From Octopus sinensis (lineage: Eukaryota), in contig NC_043025.1 of NCBI RefSeq assembly GCF_006345805.1, forward strand, positions 15,438,001 to 15,502,000: a DNA stretch of 64,000 bases, given 5' to 3'. The notes under the pieces were generated by a model. That model was not told the DNA's origin and did not search any database. It saw nothing but the letters and a program-made list of their open reading frames with translations. The position numbers and the translations under genes are program-made. Shown here in pieces: positions 26,687 through 51,252 of the stretch (positions within the stretch are counted from its first letter, which is position 1; each line of letters begins with the position of its first letter).

Positions 26687-26688
26687 TC

Positions 26689-26806
26689 GTTTACAGCACC
26701 AAGGTTTCCCAAGCGGTCACCCATCTAAGCTGTAACTAGGCTTGACTTTGCTTAACTTCAGTGATCGGACGAGAACCGGTGTTTTCAAAGTGATATGGCC
26801 GTAAGC
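26689..26806 (-). pseudogene. 5S rRNA: 5S rRNA copy, full length but diverged (retroposed pseudogene)
   Basis: Minus strand GCTTACGGCCATATCACTTTGAAAACACCGGTTCTCGTCCGATCACTGAAGTTAAGC...GATGGGTGACCGCTTGGGAA...GGTGCTGTAAAC (118 nt) is invertebrate-type 5S. Has substitutions around the internal promoter and no oligo-T terminator. Confidence 0.93.
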
Positions 26807-27924
26807 TATGTTGGCATTATAAATATATAAATAGATATACAAATAGATATAAAATGTCGATATGATATAAAAACTTGTAGTTATTTAAAAATATTCAAAA
26901 ATGCTCGATACAAGGTAATAAAGATTCACAAGTAACAACACAGAGTCCAGTGGAAAATTTGAGACTATACAACATTAACAGGACATACTAATATACGAAA
27001 ATATGTTCCATCTTAAATATTAAATATATATATGTTCATATACTTGTTGGGGGGTCGGTTTTAATACTGTATTATCTGGAACTTTATATGTCCAATGAAA
27101 GTACACATATATATTGAGTATTCTATTCCGCTGGTATTGCCTCCATTGAAATTTTTTTGGGGGTTCAGTCCCACTGCGTGGCACTTTGGGTACGTGTCTT
27201 CTGCTATAGCCCCGAGCCGACCGGAGCTTTGTCATTGAATTCGGTAGGTGGAAGTTACTGCCATGTGTGTATGTGTGCGTATAGCTGCTCAGTGCCTCTC
27301 CAAAAGAGAGAGAGGGATATATGTATATAAATTAGAAAAAAACCCCACCTTTTATCAATTCAAAATGAACAATTAAATTACACCATCTAGAAAATTACAT
27401 ATAATAGAAATATTAAAAATAAAATAACAATAATACACCAAATACATACGTTTTTATTATTATTTTGCAATTTACTTAATCATAGGTATATTATTGTTAT
27501 TTTAATTTTAATATTTCTATTATATGTAATTTTCTAGATTGTGTAATTTAATTGTCCATTTTGAATTGATAAAAGGTGTTTTTTTCTAATATTTTATATA
27601 TATATTATATTTTGTGAAATTTGATTTAGTATTTCTAAATTGAATTTTTCCCTGTAAGTTAGGAATAATATTCCCTCAAATAATAATTATATATATATAT
27701 ACACACACACACATACATACATACACAGAATCCATAGAGGAGATCCAGACATTTTCCATATACAAGGCAGTCGTGCTCAAAAGACACAAACTTAGATTCT
27801 GTCTTTACAAGGGATTGATTCCATGGGGTAAAGAAGAACTATAAGAGGGATCAAATGGAGTCAGTGTAGAGGTAATTATGCAGATAAACAGATATGTTAA
27901 ATATATTAAATTCTGACAAGTAGG

Positions 27925-29461: not shown

Positions 29462-29521
29462 AAGATTTGATGTAATCCCAACAGACTCGGCCGCAGCAAA
29501 GGACAACGTGAAGTTTCTCCG
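29462..29521 (-). CDS. SPECC1L: Cytospin-A CH-domain exon (missed by ORF track)
   Basis: tctatctttcag|CGG...CTT|gtgagt. RRNFTLSFAAAESVGITSNL, 60 nt, phase 0/0. Confidence 0.95.
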
Positions 29522-30751: not shown

Positions 30752-30801
30752 AAAAAGATGGAACGCTTCACGAATTTGCGTGTCATCCTTGTGTAGGGGC
30801 C

Positions 30802-30834
<33 letters not shown>

Positions 30835-30847
30835 AATATGTACTGCC
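30752..30847 (-). pseudogene. U6: U6 snRNA copy lacking about 11 nt at the 5' end
   Basis: Minus strand GGCAGTACATATTCTAAAATTGGAACGATACAGAGAAGATTAGCATGGCCCCTACACAAGGATGACACGCAAATTCGTGAAGCGTTCCATCTTTTT. ACAGAGA box and AGC intact; two G>A changes in the ISL region. Confidence 0.95.
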
Positions 30848-31797
30848 TGTATATATATATATATATATAACAATAATAATAAAGGGTAAAATTAATTAAC
30901 TAATTAGTAATTAATAATTTTACCAAGCAGTGTTCAGTATGTAAAAGGACCATTTACGGTAAACTTAAACATTACTTTATATAATTAGGGTTCAGCAAAA
31001 AAATTTGCTTTACCACATACTGAACTTTTAGAAATAGCAGCCAAAGAATTTAGCTATTTAGCTATATATATATACATATATATGTAATGAAAACGAATCG
31101 TGAATAGGAAGGGGGATCCCCTTCTCTCCCTTCCTACAACCTATATCCATTGTCATGGAACCTCATCCCCAAAAAACAAAAACAATGTTCTCCTCTTGTA
31201 AACAAGACCCCCAAAAACATCTGTTTTATATAAATGAACAAGCTGTTGGTACGTTCACAAAATTCTAATCAACAAATTCGAGAAACAAATGAAAGTGCGA
31301 ATAATAATGAATGGATAAAAAGATTTTTTCCCAAAAATTCTGGCTACATTTTTTTCTCAATATTCAAGTGTTAAGTGTGGTTAAGTACACCACACTTAAC
31401 ACTCCATACATCAGTTCCTACCCTGAATAAAATAGATTTATAGCAACATTTTCTTTTTGTGGCAAAATATGCACCTAATTCAATAAAATTATGAAGGTTA
31501 CTCTGATTATTAAGCATAAAATACAAAATATTAAAATTTTTGTAGATTAGGTAGGCATAATTCACTCCTGCTTTTCAATCTCAGTATTTAAGCTACATGT
31601 AGCACTGCTGTAGTACACATGCTGTGTACACTCCTACAACATTTTCTTTACACACTATAAAGGCAAAACTAAATCTGCCATCAACTCAGTCACACGTCTG
31701 TGTTTTGCTTATTTTTGTGTGTTTTACTACATAAAGGTCACCAACTGCCTACCTTGAGTAATTACTGATGGCACGTGACTGGCATATGTCTACATAT

Positions 31798-32616: not shown

Positions 32617-32733
32617 CTTGTCTTCTGAGGTCAGTTCATCATAAGGCATCTTTTCAGGAAGGTAACTATGTATAAGGGCACAGAATGCCAGTCCATCATT
32701 CCAGCTGCTGCTGAAGTTGGTGATGTCAACACC
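32617..32733 (-). CDS. SPECC1L: Cytospin-A CH-domain exon
   Basis: ctcctccgcag|GGT...AAG|gtaacc. [39 protein letters not shown], 117 nt, phase 0/0. Confidence 0.96.
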
Positions 32734-37949: not shown

Positions 37950-38045
37950 AAAATGCTTCTGACCAAAGGTACAACAACAATGTGCCCTCCTTCCACTGCT
38001 CACCTCTACACAACAACAACAAGAAGATTAAGTAGGATTACTCAC

Positions 38046-41032
38046 CAGATTCCACTATTGCGCCTACTGCTGCTCCGGGACGACAAGATAGACGAGATGG
38101 ACGGTGACACTTTCGAATGTTCAGACTCATTTCGGTTGTTCTGCTGAACCGGTTTCAATTCCTTGCCTTTCTCAAACGTCGTGCCGAGCGGTTGCAGGGG
38201 TGATAGCTTCTCAGCAGCAGGTCGCTTCAAGACAGACCTCAGTGGCAGTTCCGACGACCCCTGGGGTGACAGATCAGTGGGCGTCGACGGGGACTTGGCA
38301 TCAGTGAGGTCACTGTTGGATGGGGACAGGGGGCAGCACACAAGCTCCAATGAGCTGCGACGAGAGCTGTTCTCGCTCGAGTGGATCGATGAGTTGCCAC
38401 TCTTCACTTGATCCTCGATTGACCGGATCAGGTTCTTCACAGACATCGTTTGGTTCTTGCTGTCCATACGTCGGCCTTCTCGCAGCGCAATCAACTCCCG
38501 ATCGACTGAGCTAAGCATTTTACCTTTTAGCTCAGCAGGCGAGAAGATTGGCTTTGATGACCGTTCGTCCCAGGAGCGGAGTTTCACGCTGTCCAGCTCA
38601 TCCTTTGCTTTGCTCAGCTGACTCTGCAACGACTTCAGTTTCTCCCGCATTGACGCATTCTCACAGACCAGCCGTTCCATATCCTCCTGGGTCTCTGTCC
38701 GGAAATCATTAGCAATGACCACTGCCACCTGCAGGTCTTTCTGGAACTGCTTCCATTCCTCGGATTCCTCTTCGTGTCGGTGATGGACGTCATGCAGTTC
38801 TGACTCCACGACCGACTTCTGCCGAAGCAGGTCTTTGATTTCCTGTTGCAGTTCTTGGATCTTTGCATTGCACCTCTTCACATCGTCACGGTAACGGTCA
38901 CAGTCCTGTTCCAGCTGTTCAATGTGGTCCCGCAGTGTTTCCTCTTCCTGCTGAATGTCTACCCGTTCCTTTTGCATTGCGTCTACCTTCAGCTCCAGTT
39001 CAGAGATCCTTGTTTTGGAGTTTGACTTGAGGCCCCTCACCTCTTCCTCACGTGCCATCAGGGTCCCGCGCACTTTTTCCATCTCTCGTTGCAACAGCAA
39101 AATCTCTTCTGTCAGGTTGGTCACCTTCATCTCCATCTCATCCTTCTCCTTCCGAGTGGTCAACAGCAGCTGTTCAAGGTCAGACTTGTTGTCCTGAGCC
39201 AACTGCATTTGCTCCAGCTTTTCGACCTTTGACCGCTCGCATTCCAGCATGGTCTTGTACCGGGTCATCTCAATCCTGTCGTCTGACAGTGACTGCTTCA
39301 TCTCGGAAATCAGTTTCTCCGAGTTCTCTTTCTCTTCGGTCAATGTATCCACCTCACCCTGGAGCAGCTGTGTTTTGTCCCGAAGGGCACTCACAAGTTC
39401 CTGTGCCTCTCGGTTCTCGGTGATGGCCATCTGGAGCTCATTCGAATACTCGTCCTGTTTGCGCAGCATCTCTTCTCGCTCGATCGATGCACTCTTGAGC
39501 AAATCAATCATTTGTTGTTCTCGCTCTGTGCTGTTTATCAGACTGCTGTTGATCAATAATGACTTCAGGTGCTCCAGCTGGGTGCGACAGTGCTCCAGCT
39601 TCTCAGTCTGCGTGCACAGCGACTCAAGCACGACGCCTCGTTCGTCTGCAAGCTTCTCGTTATCCTCAGTCAATTCGTTCACCATGTCCTGGAGATCGCT
39701 AAGTTCCTGCAATGTTGCCTGCAGTTCCTCGTTAGTGCTGTAATGAGTCTCTTCCATCTGAAGGATCCGCTCCGTGAGGCACGCCACCGACACCTCACTC
39801 ATTGCGTCGCTGCTTTTGTTGCTCTGTTTGTCCCAGCCGACATTGTCCAGCGACAGCTCCGAGGGGTGTTCTGGTGTGCCACACAGGTCATCCAACGTCA
39901 AGCCCGGTTCGGACATGGGATAGTCGTAACGCCTCGGACAAGGTTCTCGCAGAGAGTCAAAATTGGATAGATTATCACAACTTATGCTTGACGGCATCAC
40001 TTTGCTAGCAGGTTCACTTTGGTTTGACGATGGTGGACTTGGGGTCTTCTTTGGCATGGAAATTTTCTCAGCATCGGGGAGTTGCTCAATAGAGATACCA
40101 AATTCCTTTAAGCGTTCTTGAAGAACTTTGTTCTGATTCCTAAGCAACTCACATTCCTCTCGAAGATCCTGAGATGGGATTTGTTCTTTAAGATTCCTTA
40201 TCTCGTACTTGTGCCTCTCAATCTCTGCTTTCCGCCCTTCAGTGATCTGGATCAATTCTGAAATGCGGTTTTCCAGGGCCTTTTTCTCACGCTCAAAATT
40301 GGCAAGCAGCTCGGCATTGTACGCCATCACATCAGCCGGTGCCGAAGTCCTCTTACGTACCGTCTTATCTTTGGTCATGCTTTGTGAACTGTGTGCCCGC
40401 TTCATCGAAGAGTGGGTCTTGCCACTGGAGTGTAAACCCGCCGACCCCGTCGTGAAAACGCCTTTGCCAGTTTTATCAATGTTCTGGGTACTCGATGCTT
40501 TGCGGATGGTTGAATTTACACCTGTGGCAGTCCGTCCACCTTTGGTCGTCGTTGACGACGAAGATGTCGTCGTCGTCGTAGCTGCTGTCGTTGACGATGT
40601 GGTGATTGTTGCCGAAGTCCCAGTCGGGGCCGGTTTCGCAAACACCACATTCTTCTCCTTCTCTTTGAGGACATTCTCCTTGTTGCTGCTCGTCTTGCTA
40701 ACGCCGGTCCCACCGCTGTTTACCTTTGGTCTGTCCGGTAACAGAGAAAGCTGCTTCTTCTTCTTCTGCTGTTGGTGGGTGGTGAGGTTTTCGTGGCTTT
40801 TGCTCAGATATTGTTTACTGAGTGGGGCACCCATTATTTTTCTTGAGGACGGTGTGGATGTAGAGATGGTGCTAAGTCCGGAGTTCTCAGATTTCGATCG
40901 CATCGGTGCCACCGTTTCGGTGGCTGTCGTCATTGTCGTGGTGGTGGTGGTGGTACTGTTGCTGCTGACTACAAACATCTTGGAGGGCCCTTTCTCTTGC
41001 TTCTTCATGGTAAGAACCTTCTGGCCAACTTT
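38046..41032 (-). CDS. SPECC1L: Cytospin-A (SPECC1L-like) large exon: Ser/Thr-rich N-terminus and long coiled coil; likely start ATG at 41008
   Basis: 988-aa ORF with YNAELLANFEREKKALE... and EWKQFQKDLQVAVVIANDF, characteristic of cytospins. Acceptor ttttacag|AAAG at 41032. Donor ATCTG|gtgagt at 38046, phase 2, matches the next exon. Confidence 0.93.
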
Positions 41033-41132
41033 CTGTAAAAAAAAAAGAAAAAAAAAGACAAGTTATTAAACAATACCAAAAACAAAAGGACAAACTAAAA
41101 AAAAAAGGGATGCTGGAAATAGTAACGACCCC

Positions 41133-41351
41133 TTAAACCTTTAGCATTTAAACCGGCCAAAAGTATTCTGCCTGTTTTATGTCCAAACTGGCCAGATTTG
41201 GTCTCTCACACCAACCCCACAATATCACTTTAAAAATTAACAGCTTCCTCATCAAAATCTCATAAATACAAGATAATGTAAGATTAGTTCAAACCAATGT
41301 GGATAAAAAAGGATTAGTTTTGGCAGAATAGTGCGAACACTAAAGGGTTAA
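41133..41351. mobile_element. Possible piggyBac-type MITE (TTAA-flanked)
   Basis: TTAA-ACCTTTAGCATT ... AACACTAAAGGG-TTAA. Short imperfect TIRs. Confidence 0.4.
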
Positions 41352-41430
41352 ATGACGAAATGGTTGCATGATGGCATGTGCCAAATGGGAACTGGGCTGG
41401 AATAACTGTATCCACATAACTACATCCACA

Positions 41431-41649
41431 CCAGAAGGTTCTTACCATGAAGAAGCAAGAGAAAGGGCCCTCCAAGATGTTTGTAGTCAGCAGCAACAGT
41501 ACCACCACCACCACCACCACCACGACAATGACGACAGCCACCGAAACGGTGGCACCGATGCGATCGAAATCTGAGAACTCTGGACTTAGCACCATCTCTA
41601 CATTCACACCGTCCTCAAGAAAAATAATGGGTGCCCCACTCAGTAAACA
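41431..41649 (+). repeat. Inverted partial duplication of cytospin exon 5' end (copy of 40812-41024)
   Basis: 219 bp, reverse complement of 213 exon nt. Two substitutions and two extra ACC triplets. Confidence 0.97.
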
Positions 41650-42182
41650 TAAAGAACTTCTTTCAGTTTCCGTCTACCAAATCCATTTACAAGGCTTTGT
41701 TGGCCTGGGGCTAAGTAGAAGACACCATGACCAAGGTGCTGAGCACTGAGATGGAACTTGAAACCTTGTGGTTGGGAAGTAAACTTCTTACGACATGGCC
41801 ATGCCCTACACCTACACACACATATCCTATATGCATGTACCTGTCTGGCTTCTCCTACTGTATTTCTGTATTACACACACACACACACACATACAGGGTG
41901 CAGTGAATAAATTTGTCTAAATTACGCAAAAATGAAAATAAGACTGACATTTCATTCTAACAGATATATTTACCAAAATTACACAAAAATATCTTCAAAG
42001 AGTAAATTTATTCAACCACAATCCCTAGATGACCTTGGAATCTCCTCCAACTCTTCTTGATGGTCTCCTTGTTTAAGTTGGTGAATGCTGCCATAATCCT
42101 TGCCTTCAGTTCATCTTTGGTGTTACAAGGAGTTTTGTTGGTCTCTCACTCAACTGTGCCCTACACATAATAAGGAAGGGAG

Positions 42183-48998: not shown

Positions 48999-51252
48999 AA
49001 AGATGTCTTCCTTGATGCCCCAATTCACCTGGGACCTTTTTAGCCACCTGTCCTCATCCATACACATTACCTGCCCCGTATCAAAACAACAGAGACCCTC
49101 ATCCCTCTCACTCCCTGTTTTTTGATTTGGTAGACGGAAACACAGCCACAAAACCATGCCAAAGCAGACCTCACCAGTGCTGGGGCCCCCTAAAAACCAC
49201 TAAGTCCACTCTGTAAAGTGGTCGGTGTTGGCCATCCAGCTGCAAGAATCATGCCAAAGCTGACAGTGTGGAGGCGTGTGACTCAGTGGTTAGGGTGTCA
49301 GCACCATGATCGTAAGATTGTGGTTTCGATTCCTGGACCGGGCGACGCGTTGTGTTCTTGAGCAAAACCCTTCATTTCACGTTGCTCCAGTCCACTCAGC
49401 TGGCAAAAATGAGTAACGCTGCGATGGACTGGCGTCCCATCCAGCTGGGGAACACATACGCCACTGAAACCGGGCCCATGAGCCTGGCTAGGCTTTAAAA
49501 GGGCACATTTATTTGGAGGCACATGGCCTAGTGGTTAGAGCAGCAGCCTCACGGTTGTGGGATCGTGGGTTCGAATCTCAGACTGGGCGATGTGTGTGTT
49601 TATGAGCGAAACACCTAAGCTCCACGCGGCTCCAGCTGAAGGTAATGATGAACTTTTGCTGACTCTTTCGCCACAACATTCTCTCACTCTTTCCTCCATC
49701 TTGCAGCTCACCTGCGATGGGGAACCTATACGCCAAAGAAACAGAGAAACCGGCCCTTATGAGCCAAGCATGGCTTGAGAAGGAACAAACAAAGCTGACA
49801 GTGGAGCTTAGCACAGTCCATGGGCTTACCAGCTGAAGAAATCAAGCCAAACCGGACTGGAGCCTGGTGCAGCTTTCCTGCTCATCAGATCCAGTAAAAC
49901 TGTCTAACCCATGCCAGCATGGAAAGCAGACGTAAATGATGATGATGATGATGGCTATTTGCAGCAGAAATCACTGTTATCCCATTTATTGTTGGCAGCA
50001 AAATTTGGTTGGTATGAGGAAAGTGGGTACCTGCCACCGAGGAGGCACATGTTGCAATCCTGGCACCCATTCCAAATGGTCCTTGTCTGCTAGAGATATA
50101 CAGTTGTGCTCTTAGTATCGGACATCTACATGAGAGAACCTTCCAAGTTGTTTTACAGGGCTGGGAAAAACTGAAAGACCACCGCAACAAGTGTTGGATC
50201 TGAGAGGTGAATAATGGTGAATAAAATCATAATTAACTGATCCTTCCTGTATTTTCTTTTAGCTAAAGCCAGAAACTTTTCAGCACGTGTGTATGTACAT
50301 GCATGCGTGTGTGTATGTGTGCACACACGCATGTGTGTGTATATATATATATAATTTAAATAATGAGGGAGATAAATTGAATATTAATTTAATTAATATC
50401 AATTTAAAACCAGTAGCCTAGCATACAAAAAATCTGAAAAATCAGAGAAAATTCCAATACATGTGTATATTTGAAGAGCAAAACCACTAGGTGGCACGGC
50501 CGTATGCTAGAAGTAGATCACCTATGATCAAACTACAAAGAAAAGAATGTTCTCTAGAGGAAGATTCGGTGATCTACTTCTAGCATATGGCCAACCACCT
50601 AGTGGTTTTGCTCTTCAAATATACACACACAAACACACATATATGTATGTGTGTGTATCAGTGTTTGTCCGCCTTCCTCCAGTGCTTGACAACCAGTGTT
50701 GGTGTGTTTACACCCTCACATCTTAGCTTAACAAAAAGAGACCGATAGAATAAATACCAGGTTTAAAATAAAAAAAATACTGGGGTCAATTTGCTCAACT
50801 ACAGTTTTTAAAGGCAGTGCCCCAGCATGGCCACACTAATGGCAGAGACAAGTAAAAGAAAAGATACATAAACAGACCGATGTGTGTAGGAGGGTAAATC
50901 TCCTGTTACCCCCACCACAAGGCATCAAGCTGTGTCTGTGTGTCTGAGAGTGTGGTTATGTTTACATATGGTTGTAAATATATATATTAATTATAATAAA
51001 GGGTTAATTGCAACAAGTTGCTCAAAACCACATACTGAAAATATTAGAAATAGCAGCCAAATAGTAGGAGAAATAGTGACCCATTTGGCTGCTATTTCTA
51101 ATATTTTCGGTATGTGGTTTTGAGCAACTTGTTGCAATTAACCCTTTATTATAATTAACATAATCCTTACCAAATATGGTCTTTTCCATACCGATAAATC
51201 TACTAGGTGAAATTTATTAATTTTATTAAATTAATTATATTTCACCCATTTT

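What the first reader, a model, noticed from the sequence alone, without database searches (positions are those of the whole stretch)
40812..41649. Inverted intronic copy of the cytospin start-codon region would form a ~213-bp pre-mRNA duplex that loops out the 3' splice site
41431-41649 is an inverted copy of exon sequence 41024-40812 with 2 substitutions and a 6-nt indel (seen). In the minus-strand pre-mRNA the intron arm comes first. It is followed by a 406-nt loop holding the polypyrimidine tract and AG (acceptor at 41032), then the exon arm, which starts 8 nt into the exon and covers the AUG and about 65 codons. Established: long intron-exon duplexes are ADAR editing-complementary sequences, and coleoid cephalopods recode mRNA heavily by A-to-I editing. 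Inference: a recently born ECS built from the gene's own exon could cause clustered recoding (K2/K3/K6 to R or E, Thr-run ACC to GCC=Ala), AUG-to-IUG start loss, or altered use of this splice site.
Basis: partly seen in the sequence, partly recalled or inferred. Interest (0 to 1): 0.8.

Follow-up and report, generated by a model that had tools for sequence, protein, structure and literature searches.

The report
Young exon-copy hairpin in octopus cytospin
In Octopus sinensis, a DNA-copying slip recently pasted a 219-base backwards copy of the start of a cytospin-A coding exon into the intron just upstream, so the primary transcript can fold into a ~211-bp hairpin that is a textbook RNA-editing target; whether it is actually edited is untested.

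Summary
The inverted repeat is real as assembled. Window 41431-41649 is the reverse complement of 40812-41024, with 2 substitutions and a 6-nt (ACC)2 indel. It is the longest and most perfect inverted repeat in the window.

The window is Octopus sinensis cytospin-A. The acceptor at 41032 is confirmed, but the exon is coding exon 2 of isoform X1. Exon 1 lies 75.8 kb upstream, and ATG 41008 is the start codon only for isoform X2.

O. bimaculoides and a third Octopus species lack the copy at the orthologous site, so it is a young, lineage-specific insertion. Its junctions show 2-3-nt microhomologies, a second 11-nt segment templated from the same exon, and a pre-existing 10-nt inverted match at the target. 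This is the signature of serial microhomology-mediated template switching.

The pre-mRNA is predicted to form about 211 inter-arm base pairs (net gain about -325 kcal/mol), with the 3' splice site in a 406-nt loop. Promiscuous ADAR editing is the most likely consequence: 72 exon-arm adenosines, 55 of them recoding. No RNA data, reads or O. vulgaris DNA could be reached.

Verdict: a real, recently born ECS-like structure whose origin is resolved and whose function is untested and probably non-adaptive.

The parts
40812..41024 (-). Exon arm: the first 213 nt (after 8 nt) of cytospin-A coding exon 2. It covers codons 14-84 of isoform X1, including ATG 41006-41008, which is Met20 of X1 and the initiator of X2.
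41431..41649 (-). Intron arm: a 219-nt inverted copy of the exon arm. It is absent from O. bimaculoides and from the Octopus sp. contig L002. It carries two derived changes (41581, 41604), which give A:C mismatches in the RNA with the A on the intron side, and two extra ACC units that form a 6-nt bulge.
41410..41430 (-). Complex junction filler, read on the minus strand as TGTGGATGTAG + TTA + TGTGGAT. 41420-41430 is a second templated piece, the reverse complement of exon 40853-40863. 41410-41416 repeats its first 7 nt. Microhomologies are GG, and then GAT back to the original template.
41647..41649 (-). Outer junction: a 3-nt microhomology (TGT on the minus strand) shared by the ancestral flank ..TTATGT and the reverse-complemented exon.
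41025..41430 (-). The 406-nt loop of the predicted hairpin. It holds the unique intron, a MITE-like insertion, the polypyrimidine tract (about 41035-41110), the 3' splice site AG (41033-41034) and the first 8 nt of the exon.
41137..41347 (.). A 211-bp MITE-like insertion flanked by a TTAA duplication (41348-41351 and 41133-41136), with imperfect CCCTTTAG.. terminal inverted repeats (piggyBac-type target site). It is absent from both outgroups. It roughly doubles the spacer, from about 190 nt to 406 nt.
41657..41822 (.). A SINE copy next to the outer end of the intron arm. It is present at the orthologous site in O. bimaculoides (92% identity), so it predates the duplication and did not carry it.
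38048..41032 (-). Cytospin-A coding exon 2, about 2985 nt and 996 codons.
41440..41448 (-). A donor-like motif ATG|GTAAGA created in the intron arm. It is the reverse complement of the Kozak region TCTTACCAT. It lies inside the predicted duplex. Its use is untested.

Best explanation
Shown:
- The feature is a young insertion specific to the Octopus sinensis lineage, placed 0.4-0.6 kb from the 3' end of the 75.8-kb first coding intron of cytospin-A.
- It consists of a 219-nt reverse-complement copy of the first part of the next exon, plus an 11-nt second piece and a 7-nt third piece templated from the same exon.

Inferred from junction anatomy:
- It arose in one event by serial, microhomology-mediated template switching. 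This is a replication-based FoSTeS/MMBIR or 'template-switch mutation' type event, or polymerase-theta-like repair.
- The event was probably nucleated by a pre-existing 10-11-nt inverted match between the intron site (ATGTAGAGAT) and the exon (ATCTCTACAT).

Inferred from thermodynamics and ADAR biochemistry:
- In any pre-mRNA that starts upstream, the intron arm is made seconds before the exon arm.
- The two arms zip into a duplex of about 211 bp. Its only imperfections are two A:C mismatches and a 6-nt bulge, and the 3' splice site sits in the loop.
- Such long, near-perfect nuclear dsRNA is the classic substrate for promiscuous ADAR deamination. The expected result is clustered, partial A-to-I editing of both arms.
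- The exon arm has 72 adenosines, and 55 would recode: T>A, K>E/R, M>V, S>G and others.
- A secondary effect on 3' splice-site use is possible.

The structure is most likely a neutral or slightly deleterious by-product, not an adaptation.

The confidence of 0.6 is for the whole chain. The 'real, derived, template-switch insertion' part alone I put at about 0.9. The 'detectably edited in vivo' part I put at about 0.55-0.65.
For: - Repeat and fold. Arms alone fold at -65.6 and -42.7 kcal/mol, co-folded at -433.8, with 211 inter-arm pairs. The O. bimaculoides orthologous stretch folds at -0.215 kcal/mol per nt against -0.616 here.
- Gene, isoforms and acceptor. Exon 1 lies 75.8 kb upstream in the same assembly.
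- Derived state: O. bimaculoides L001 and Logan contig L002 join the two flanks directly.
- The copy shares 4 O. sinensis-specific substitutions with the exon. Both arm differences are derived in the copy, both C>T on the plus strand, one at a CpG.
- Age: 0.94% copy divergence against about 13% intron divergence from O. bimaculoides.
- Junctions: TGT, GG and GAT microhomologies. The 11-nt filler equals the reverse complement of exon 40853-40863 and keeps the ancestral C where the copy now has T. The 10-11-nt inverted match is present in both outgroups.
- Template switching is documented as a source of perfect hairpins (PMC5453318, PMC8794818).
- Coleoid neural tissue recodes heavily through ADAR acting on dsRNA (PMC8382921).
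Against: - There is no RNA evidence of any kind. No octopus transcript fragments of this region exist in the protein or contig collections, and no literature was found.
- No independent assembly or read support for the copy was obtained.
- The copy is 219 nt. The largest TSM-like pattern mentioned in PMC8794818 is 59 bp, so 219 nt is larger than that and the enzymology is uncertain.
- Helicases, fast co-transcriptional splicing or RNA-binding proteins could limit the lifetime of the duplex.
- Lack of conservation argues against a selected function.
Confidence: 0.6

Rival explanations
1. An inert structural variant. The insertion is real, but the duplex has no measurable consequence in vivo. 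It is unwound, outrun by splicing, or edited no more than neighbouring exon sequence. The allele is simply a young neutral polymorphism or fixation.
For: - It is absent from two related species, so no conservation supports function.
- Only 2 substitutions have accumulated since its birth.
- The window holds many other inverted repeats derived from transposable elements, so intronic dsRNA potential is commonplace in this genome.
Against: - A duplex of 211 bp that is about 99% paired, with arms only 406 nt apart, is far beyond the length at which ADARs edit promiscuously (established ADAR biochemistry).
- It is much better than any other inverted repeat in the window.
- Coleoid nervous tissue has very high editing activity (PMC8382921).
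Confidence: 0.25
2. An assembly artefact. The inverted copy was created by a chimeric or palindromic long read, or by mis-assembly, and does not exist in the animal.
For: - Only one assembly (GCA_006345805.1) could be examined.
- No independent contigs carrying the copy were found.
Against: - The copy is a clean insertion between flanks that are collinear with two other species. It is not a fold-back at a contig end.
- The arms differ by two transitions and a microsatellite step, and both transitions are derived in the copy.
- The 11-nt filler keeps the ancestral base that the copy has since lost, which implies real evolutionary time after the event.
- The junctions show biological microhomology signatures.
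Confidence: 0.05
3. A functional regulatory hairpin. In one version, Dicer processes it into endo-siRNAs that target cytospin-A itself, as with hpRNA loci. In another, it acts as a selected splicing switch that masks the exon's 5' end or offers the ATG|GTAAGA donor (41440-41448) to shift isoform usage between X1 and X2.
For: - It is a long, near-perfect hairpin derived from the gene's own exon. This is the architecture of hpRNA and young miRNA loci born by inverted duplication (template-switch births of miRNAs, bioRxiv 10.1101/2023.04.19.537475).
- The duplex begins 8 nt from the 3' splice site.
- A near-consensus donor motif is created in the intron arm.
Against: - No small-RNA or isoform data were available.
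- It is not an independent transcription unit.
- It is not conserved.
- The hairpin is nuclear and intron-borne, where ADAR normally competes with and antagonises Dicer processing.
- Isoforms X1 and X2 both exist in O. bimaculoides, which lacks the copy.
Confidence: 0.07
4. An origin mediated by RNA or a transposable element: a retrocopy of the mRNA 5' end, or a fragment transduced or captured by the adjacent SINE or the MITE.
For: - The outer end of the copy lies 7 nt from a SINE end (41657), and a TTAA-type MITE sits 83 nt from its inner end.
- A 6-nt duplication (TTATGT) flanks the insert.
Against: - The SINE is orthologously present in O. bimaculoides without the copy.
- The MITE is not contiguous with the copy and has its own TTAA duplication.
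- There is no poly(A) tail and no upstream-exon sequence.
- The copy is of the 5' part of a 3-kb exon, not a 3' end.
- The extra 11-nt and 7-nt pieces templated from the same exon, with 2-3-nt microhomologies, fit polymerase template switching and not target-primed reverse transcription (TPRT) or cut-and-paste.
Confidence: 0.03

Closest known systems
Intronic editing-complementary sequences (ECS) pairing with an exon, e.g. vertebrate GRIA2 Q/R and R/G sites and Drosophila syt1 (from established knowledge)
   Same: An intron segment of the same pre-mRNA base-pairs with coding exon sequence next to a splice site. Editing would therefore have to happen before, or be coupled to, splicing.
   Different: - Known ECSs are short (tens of bp), imperfect, conserved and site-selective, and they usually lie in the downstream intron.
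- This one is a 211-bp, roughly 99%-paired duplex in the upstream intron.
- It is species-lineage-specific, and editing at it has not been observed.
Template-switch mutations that create perfect hairpins or de novo miRNA stems (PMC5453318; PMC8794818; bioRxiv 10.1101/2023.04.19.537475)
   Same: - A reverse-complement copy of nearby sequence is created in a single event.
- The ancestral state is seen in outgroups.
- Mismatches accumulate after a phase of perfect pairing.
   Different: - The size differs: 219 nt with a spacer of about 190-406 nt, against typically tens of bases with short loops.
- The junction is multi-segment and closer to FoSTeS/MMBIR complexity.
- The template is a protein-coding exon and the product lies in that gene's own intron.
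hpRNA and endo-siRNA loci, and plant young miRNA genes, born by inverted duplication of their target gene (from established knowledge: Drosophila hpRNAs; the Arabidopsis inverted-duplication model)
   Same: A long hairpin whose arms derive from a protein-coding gene. It is evolutionarily young and has near-perfect pairing.
   Different: - In those loci both arms are usually copies in a separate transcription unit acting in trans.
- Here one arm is the functional exon itself, so the hairpin is in cis within the host pre-mRNA.
- No small RNAs have been shown.
Inverted Alu or SINE pairs in introns and UTRs that are hyper-edited by ADAR (PMC5625713, cited)
   Same: A long intramolecular dsRNA made by two inverted copies a few hundred nt apart, for which promiscuous clustered editing is expected.
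   Different: - The arms are not transposable elements.
- One arm is coding, so hyper-editing would recode a protein rather than fall in non-coding sequence.

Membership tests
ADAR editing-complementary sequence (intron-exon duplex) | An intronic segment complementary to exon sequence in the same transcript, predicted to form dsRNA | tested here: met
   There are 211 inter-arm base pairs and a co-fold energy of -433.8 kcal/mol. Both arms lie in the same pre-mRNA, because coding exon 1 is 75.8 kb upstream.
ADAR editing-complementary sequence (intron-exon duplex) | A-to-I changes (A>G in cDNA versus genomic DNA) observed in the paired exon region | not testable with these tools
   No RNA-seq access. 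No octopus transcript contigs for this region are in the collections. No literature was found.
ADAR editing-complementary sequence (intron-exon duplex) | Editing depends on the intronic arm (deletion or minigene test) | not testable with these tools
   This needs an experiment. The natural comparison, O. sinensis against O. bimaculoides, is available in principle.
ADAR editing-complementary sequence (intron-exon duplex) | Evolutionary conservation of the intronic arm, typical of functional ECSs | tested here: not met
   The arm is absent from O. bimaculoides (L001) and from the Octopus sp. contig L002.
Template-switch / FoSTeS-MMBIR inverted duplication | The new sequence is the reverse complement of a nearby template, and the ancestral state lacking it is seen in outgroups | tested here: met
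Template-switch / FoSTeS-MMBIR inverted duplication | Microhomology at switch points, and more than one templated segment at the junction | tested here: met
   TGT, GG and GAT microhomologies. There are 11-nt and 7-nt extra segments from exon 40853-40863. A pre-existing 10-11-nt inverted match sits at the target site in both outgroups.
Template-switch / FoSTeS-MMBIR inverted duplication | Size in the range described for short-range TSMs (tens of bp) | tested here: not met
   The copy is 219 nt. The largest TSM-like pattern mentioned in PMC8794818 is 59 bp. This fits the larger FoSTeS/MMBIR scale better.
hpRNA / endo-siRNA hairpin locus | A long, near-perfect hairpin derived from a protein-coding gene | tested here: met
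hpRNA / endo-siRNA hairpin locus | Small RNAs of 20-23 nt produced from the stem | not testable with these tools
   No small-RNA data were reachable.
Processed retrocopy / TE transduction | A poly(A) tail, 3'-end-biased copy, upstream-exon sequence or contiguity with the transposable element | tested here: not met
   There is no poly(A). The copy is of the exon's 5' part. The SINE predates it, and the MITE is separate with its own TTAA duplication.
Assembly palindrome artefact | Identical arms forming a fold-back, without collinear flanks on both sides | tested here: not met
   The arms differ at 2 sites and a 6-nt indel, with the changes derived in the copy. Both flanks are collinear with two other species. 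Raw reads were not available, so an artefact is unlikely but not formally excluded.

The most novel reading that the evidence does not exclude
This may be an editing-complementary sequence caught at birth in a coleoid. A single template-switch event copied a coding exon backwards into its own upstream intron. From one generation to the next it would have imposed clustered A-to-I recoding on about 70 N-terminal codons of cytospin-A (K>E/R, T>A, M>V, including the isoform-X2 initiator) in O. sinensis, and perhaps in O. vulgaris, but not in O. bimaculoides. That would be a natural with/without experiment on how new cis structures feed the cephalopod recoding repertoire, and on how exon-intron duplexes next to a 3' splice site affect splicing.
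Probability: 0.4. Interest if true: 0.7.

Novelty: new member of a known kind. Interest (0 to 1): 0.5.

Why it matters
It is still unclear how the thousands of cephalopod recoding sites acquire the dsRNA structures that ADAR needs, and whether new structure automatically yields recoding (the 'non-adaptive by-product' versus 'adaptive' debate). This locus has four useful properties:
- The structure has a datable, mechanistically resolved origin.
- One arm is coding.
- Close relatives retain the empty site.
- The prediction is sharp: a step in A>G frequency exactly at 40812 and 41024, plus editing of two intronic A:C mismatches.

Public neural RNA-seq from O. sinensis or O. vulgaris and from O. 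bimaculoides could test it without new wet work. If nothing happens at a 211-bp perfect duplex, that is also informative about how pre-mRNA context protects exons from ADAR.

On its own, without RNA data, the feature is a small, young structural variant of a familiar mutational class.

Tried and rejected
1. Independent evidence for the copy.
- The 100-aa ORF that reads through the copy into the SINE (41447-41746, plus strand) is not in the 15-billion-protein collection by exact look-up, and has no homologues of 55-175 aa.
- A 307-aa N-terminal query found only non-octopus molluscan fragments.
- So no Logan, ENA or JGI contigs from O. sinensis or O. vulgaris cover the region.

2. O. vulgaris orthologous DNA. 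Isoform X2 of O. sinensis is not on record separately.

3. Literature. No paper links cytospin/SPECC1L to octopus editing. The supplements of PMC8382921 held as text do not list it. The Liscovitch-Brauer 2017 paper could not be retrieved under the PMC id I recalled and was not among the 8 listed results of a title-phrase search.

4. Pfam gave nothing informative for the exon-2 product or the copy ORF. Rfam found nothing in the repeat.

5. The SINE-transduction, MITE-capture and retrocopy origins were rejected on the junction and outgroup evidence.

6. MAFFT mis-aligned the region with its large gaps. The junctions were therefore resolved by BLAST and exact-match scripts.
Full report
**1. Observation**

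The minus-strand sequence of 40500-42000 and the repeat finder show that 41431-41649 is the reverse complement of 40812-41024. The tool splits the repeat into two overlapping pairs (156 nt and 96 nt) because of an indel inside an ACC run.

Pairwise alignment and a base-by-base check give two substitutions: exon 40857 vs copy 41604, and exon 40880 vs copy 41581. The copy also has two extra ACC units. The spacer is 406 nt.

Among all inverted repeats with arms up to 5 kb apart in the 64-kb window, this is the longest and the best matched. The others look like pairs of transposable-element copies at 78-98% identity.

As RNA, the minus strand of 40790-41670 folds at -520 kcal/mol, against -239 +/- 8 for shuffles. 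The arms alone fold at -65.6 and -42.7 kcal/mol but co-fold at -433.8, with 211 inter-arm pairs.

**2. What the locus is**

The 988-codon ORF 38042-41008 is 100% identical to Octopus sinensis cytospin-A, XP_029653050.

The full proteins show that isoform X1 starts MPPKQGSLPQK and continues KVGQKVLTMKKQEK. The second part is exactly the translation from window 41032 onward. The AG at 41033-41034 is therefore a genuine acceptor. It is used in O. sinensis, O. vulgaris and O. bimaculoides models, and in a more distant cephalopod transcript assembled from reads (P0002).

The exon is coding exon 2. ATG 41006-41008 is Met20 of isoform X1, and the initiator only of isoform X2.

Fetching the O. sinensis gene (GCA_006345805.1 CM016887.1) and locating the window in it puts coding exon 1 about 75.8 kb upstream of 41032, outside the window. 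The inverted copy therefore lies 0.4-0.6 kb from the 3' end of a very long intron. It is necessarily transcribed just before the exon arm in isoform X1 pre-mRNA.

The remaining coding exons lie at about 35356-35171, 32733-32617, 29524-29462 and 25832-25734.

**3. Comparative evidence: the copy is derived and young**

The O. bimaculoides locus (L001) aligns collinearly with the window on both sides of the copy, but the copy itself is missing. Window 41795-41647 matches L001 41097-41244. Window 41412-41348 matches L001 41248-41312. Window 41136-38000 matches L001 41309-44491. The intron arm matches only the O. bimaculoides exon, in reverse.

A 3.4-kb genomic contig from another Octopus species (L002, Logan SRR11869390, 91% identity) gives the same result.

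Both outgroups read ..GTTCAT(T/C)ATGTAGAGATA.. where O. sinensis carries the insertion.

A four-way alignment shows three things:
- The copy carries all four substitutions that distinguish the O. sinensis exon arm from both outgroups, so it was templated by the O. sinensis-lineage exon.
- At both arm differences the exon keeps the outgroup base and the copy has T (plus strand), one of them at a CpG. Both changes therefore occurred in the copy after duplication.
- The Thr-coding ACC run varies in length in every sequence.

Copy divergence is 2/213 = 0.94%. Intron divergence from O. bimaculoides around the site is about 13%. The event therefore falls in roughly the last sixth of the O. sinensis branch.

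O. sinensis and O. vulgaris cytospin differ at 3 residues, against 29 for O. bimaculoides. Whether O. vulgaris shares the copy is genuinely open, and I could not obtain its DNA.

**4. How it arose**

Read on the minus strand, the O. sinensis sequence has these parts:
- the left flank, ..AAGTTCTTTATGT;
- segment A, the reverse complement of exon 40812-41024, whose first three bases (TGT) are shared with the flank;
- segment B, TGTGGATGTAG, the reverse complement of exon 40853-40863, entered through a GG microhomology;
- TTA;
- TGTGGAT, the first 7 nt of B again;
- the right flank, ACAGTTATTCC.., re-entered through GAT.

An 11-13-nt filler matching the same 219-nt template by chance has a probability of about 1e-4 (my estimate).

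Segment B carries the ancestral C at the position where the long copy now has T, as expected if the substitution came after the event.

In both outgroups the target site contains ATGTAGAGAT(A). This is a pre-existing 10-11-nt inverted match to the exon's ATCTCTACAT, directly adjacent to the part of the exon that supplied the filler.

These features together are the signature of serial microhomology-mediated template switching. They are inverted orientation, a template only a few hundred bases away, 2-3-nt microhomologies, several templated pieces and a nucleating quasi-palindrome. Candidate processes are replication-based FoSTeS/MMBIR, the 'template-switch mutation' process shown to create perfect hairpins and new miRNA stems (PMC5453318, PMC8794818, bioRxiv 10.1101/2023.04.19.537475), and polymerase-theta-type repair. 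The composition of the junction is shown. The enzyme is inferred.

At 219 nt the event is larger than the largest TSM-like pattern mentioned in PMC8794818 (59 bp).

Alternative origins were rejected:
- The adjacent SINE (41657-41822) is orthologously present in O. bimaculoides without the copy.
- The 211-bp MITE-like element in the spacer (41137-41347) has its own TTAA duplication and is separated from the copy. It has weak relatives elsewhere in the gene.
- There is no poly(A) tail or upstream-exon sequence.

The MITE is also absent from both outgroups. It enlarged the spacer from about 190 to 406 nt. The order of the two events is unknown.

**5. Artefact?**

I could not see reads or a second assembly of this species. 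Searches for independent contigs failed.

Internal evidence nevertheless argues strongly for a real allele:
- It is an insertion between flanks collinear with two other species.
- Its junctions carry microhomology and filler.
- Its arms differ by two transitions that are polarised to the copy.
- The filler preserves the pre-mutation base.

I put the artefact at about 5%.

**6. Most likely consequence**

The following is inferred; none of it was observed. The intron arm emerges from the polymerase 406 nt before the exon arm, and the net stabilisation of pairing is about -325 kcal/mol. In the minimum-energy structure the polypyrimidine tract and AG sit in the loop, and the duplex begins 8 nt into the exon.

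It is established ADAR biochemistry that long, nearly perfect dsRNA is deaminated promiscuously rather than site-selectively. It is also established that A opposite C is a favoured target, and that coleoid neural tissue has exceptionally high recoding activity directed by cis dsRNA structures (PMC8382921).

The exon arm contains 72 adenosines. Of these, 55 would change the amino acid if read as G: 15 T>A, 8 K>E, 8 K>R, 5 M>V, 5 S>G and others. In addition, 55 of the 72 lack the disfavoured 5' G. The two mismatches place A41581 and A41604 of the intron arm opposite C.

My best estimate is that clustered, partial editing of this stretch occurs in carriers, with a possible secondary effect on 3' splice-site kinetics. 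I also judge that the structure is a by-product rather than an adaptation, because nothing suggests selection.

The rivals are an inert variant, an hpRNA-like or splicing-switch function, and an artefact. They are scored in the Rival explanations section.

**7. Comparison with known systems**

It works like an intronic ECS, but it fails the conservation criterion and has no editing evidence, so I do not file it as a functional ECS. It qualifies as a template-switch inverted duplication on every feature tested except size. It shares its architecture with hpRNA and young-miRNA loci born by inverted duplication. It differs in that one arm is the working exon itself.

**8. Verdict**

It is a new member of a known mutational and structural class. 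Its value lies in being a clean, datable natural experiment for ECS birth in a heavily editing lineage. Interest 0.5.

Noticed in passing
window 30752-30856 (-) and 26688-26806 (-): A full-length U6 snRNA (98 bits) and a full-length 5S rRNA (89 bits) match lie inside the 3' introns of cytospin-A, on the same strand as the host gene. U6 lies between the exons at 32617 and 29524, and 5S between the exons at 29462 and 25832. I did not examine whether they are functional genes, retro-pseudogenes or SINE heads.
   Followed up: partly
window 50983-51162: An almost perfect palindrome with 80-nt arms (98% complementary) and a 20-nt spacer, flanked by TTAA on both sides. It lies in the 75.8-kb first coding intron. 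It looks like a palindromic TTAA-target MITE and would also form a hairpin in the cytospin pre-mRNA.
   Followed up: partly
window 27319-27605: An inverted repeat with 121-nt arms at 90% and only 45 nt between them, about 500 bp from the 5S match. Not examined.
   Followed up: no
L003 2001-77813 vs L001 10001-41440: The intron between coding exons 1 and 2 of cytospin-A is about 75.8 kb in O. sinensis but about 31 kb in O. bimaculoides. The O. vulgaris gene range (104 kb) is larger still. This points to large lineage-specific intron expansion, presumably from repeats.
   Followed up: no
window 40930-40965 and orthologous L001 / L002 positions: The threonine run encoded by (ACC)n at the cytospin N-terminus differs in length in every sequence compared: O. 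sinensis exon, its intronic copy, O. bimaculoides and L002. O. bimaculoides also has an extra 12-nt ACAGCCACCCGC insertion (TATR). This is a coding microsatellite evolving quickly.
   Followed up: partly
window 41440-41448 (-): The inverted copy turns the Kozak region TCTTACCAT into ATG|GTAAGA on the transcribed strand. This is a near-consensus 5' splice-site motif 408 nt upstream of the real acceptor, and a possible cryptic donor.
   Followed up: no
L002 245-882: In the Logan contig from SRR11869390, the gene caller starts the cytospin ORF at an internal Met (MKRAHSS..), although the N-terminal exon sequence is present upstream. This suggests a frame disruption or sequencing error in that contig. 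The species of that run is unknown to me.
   Followed up: no
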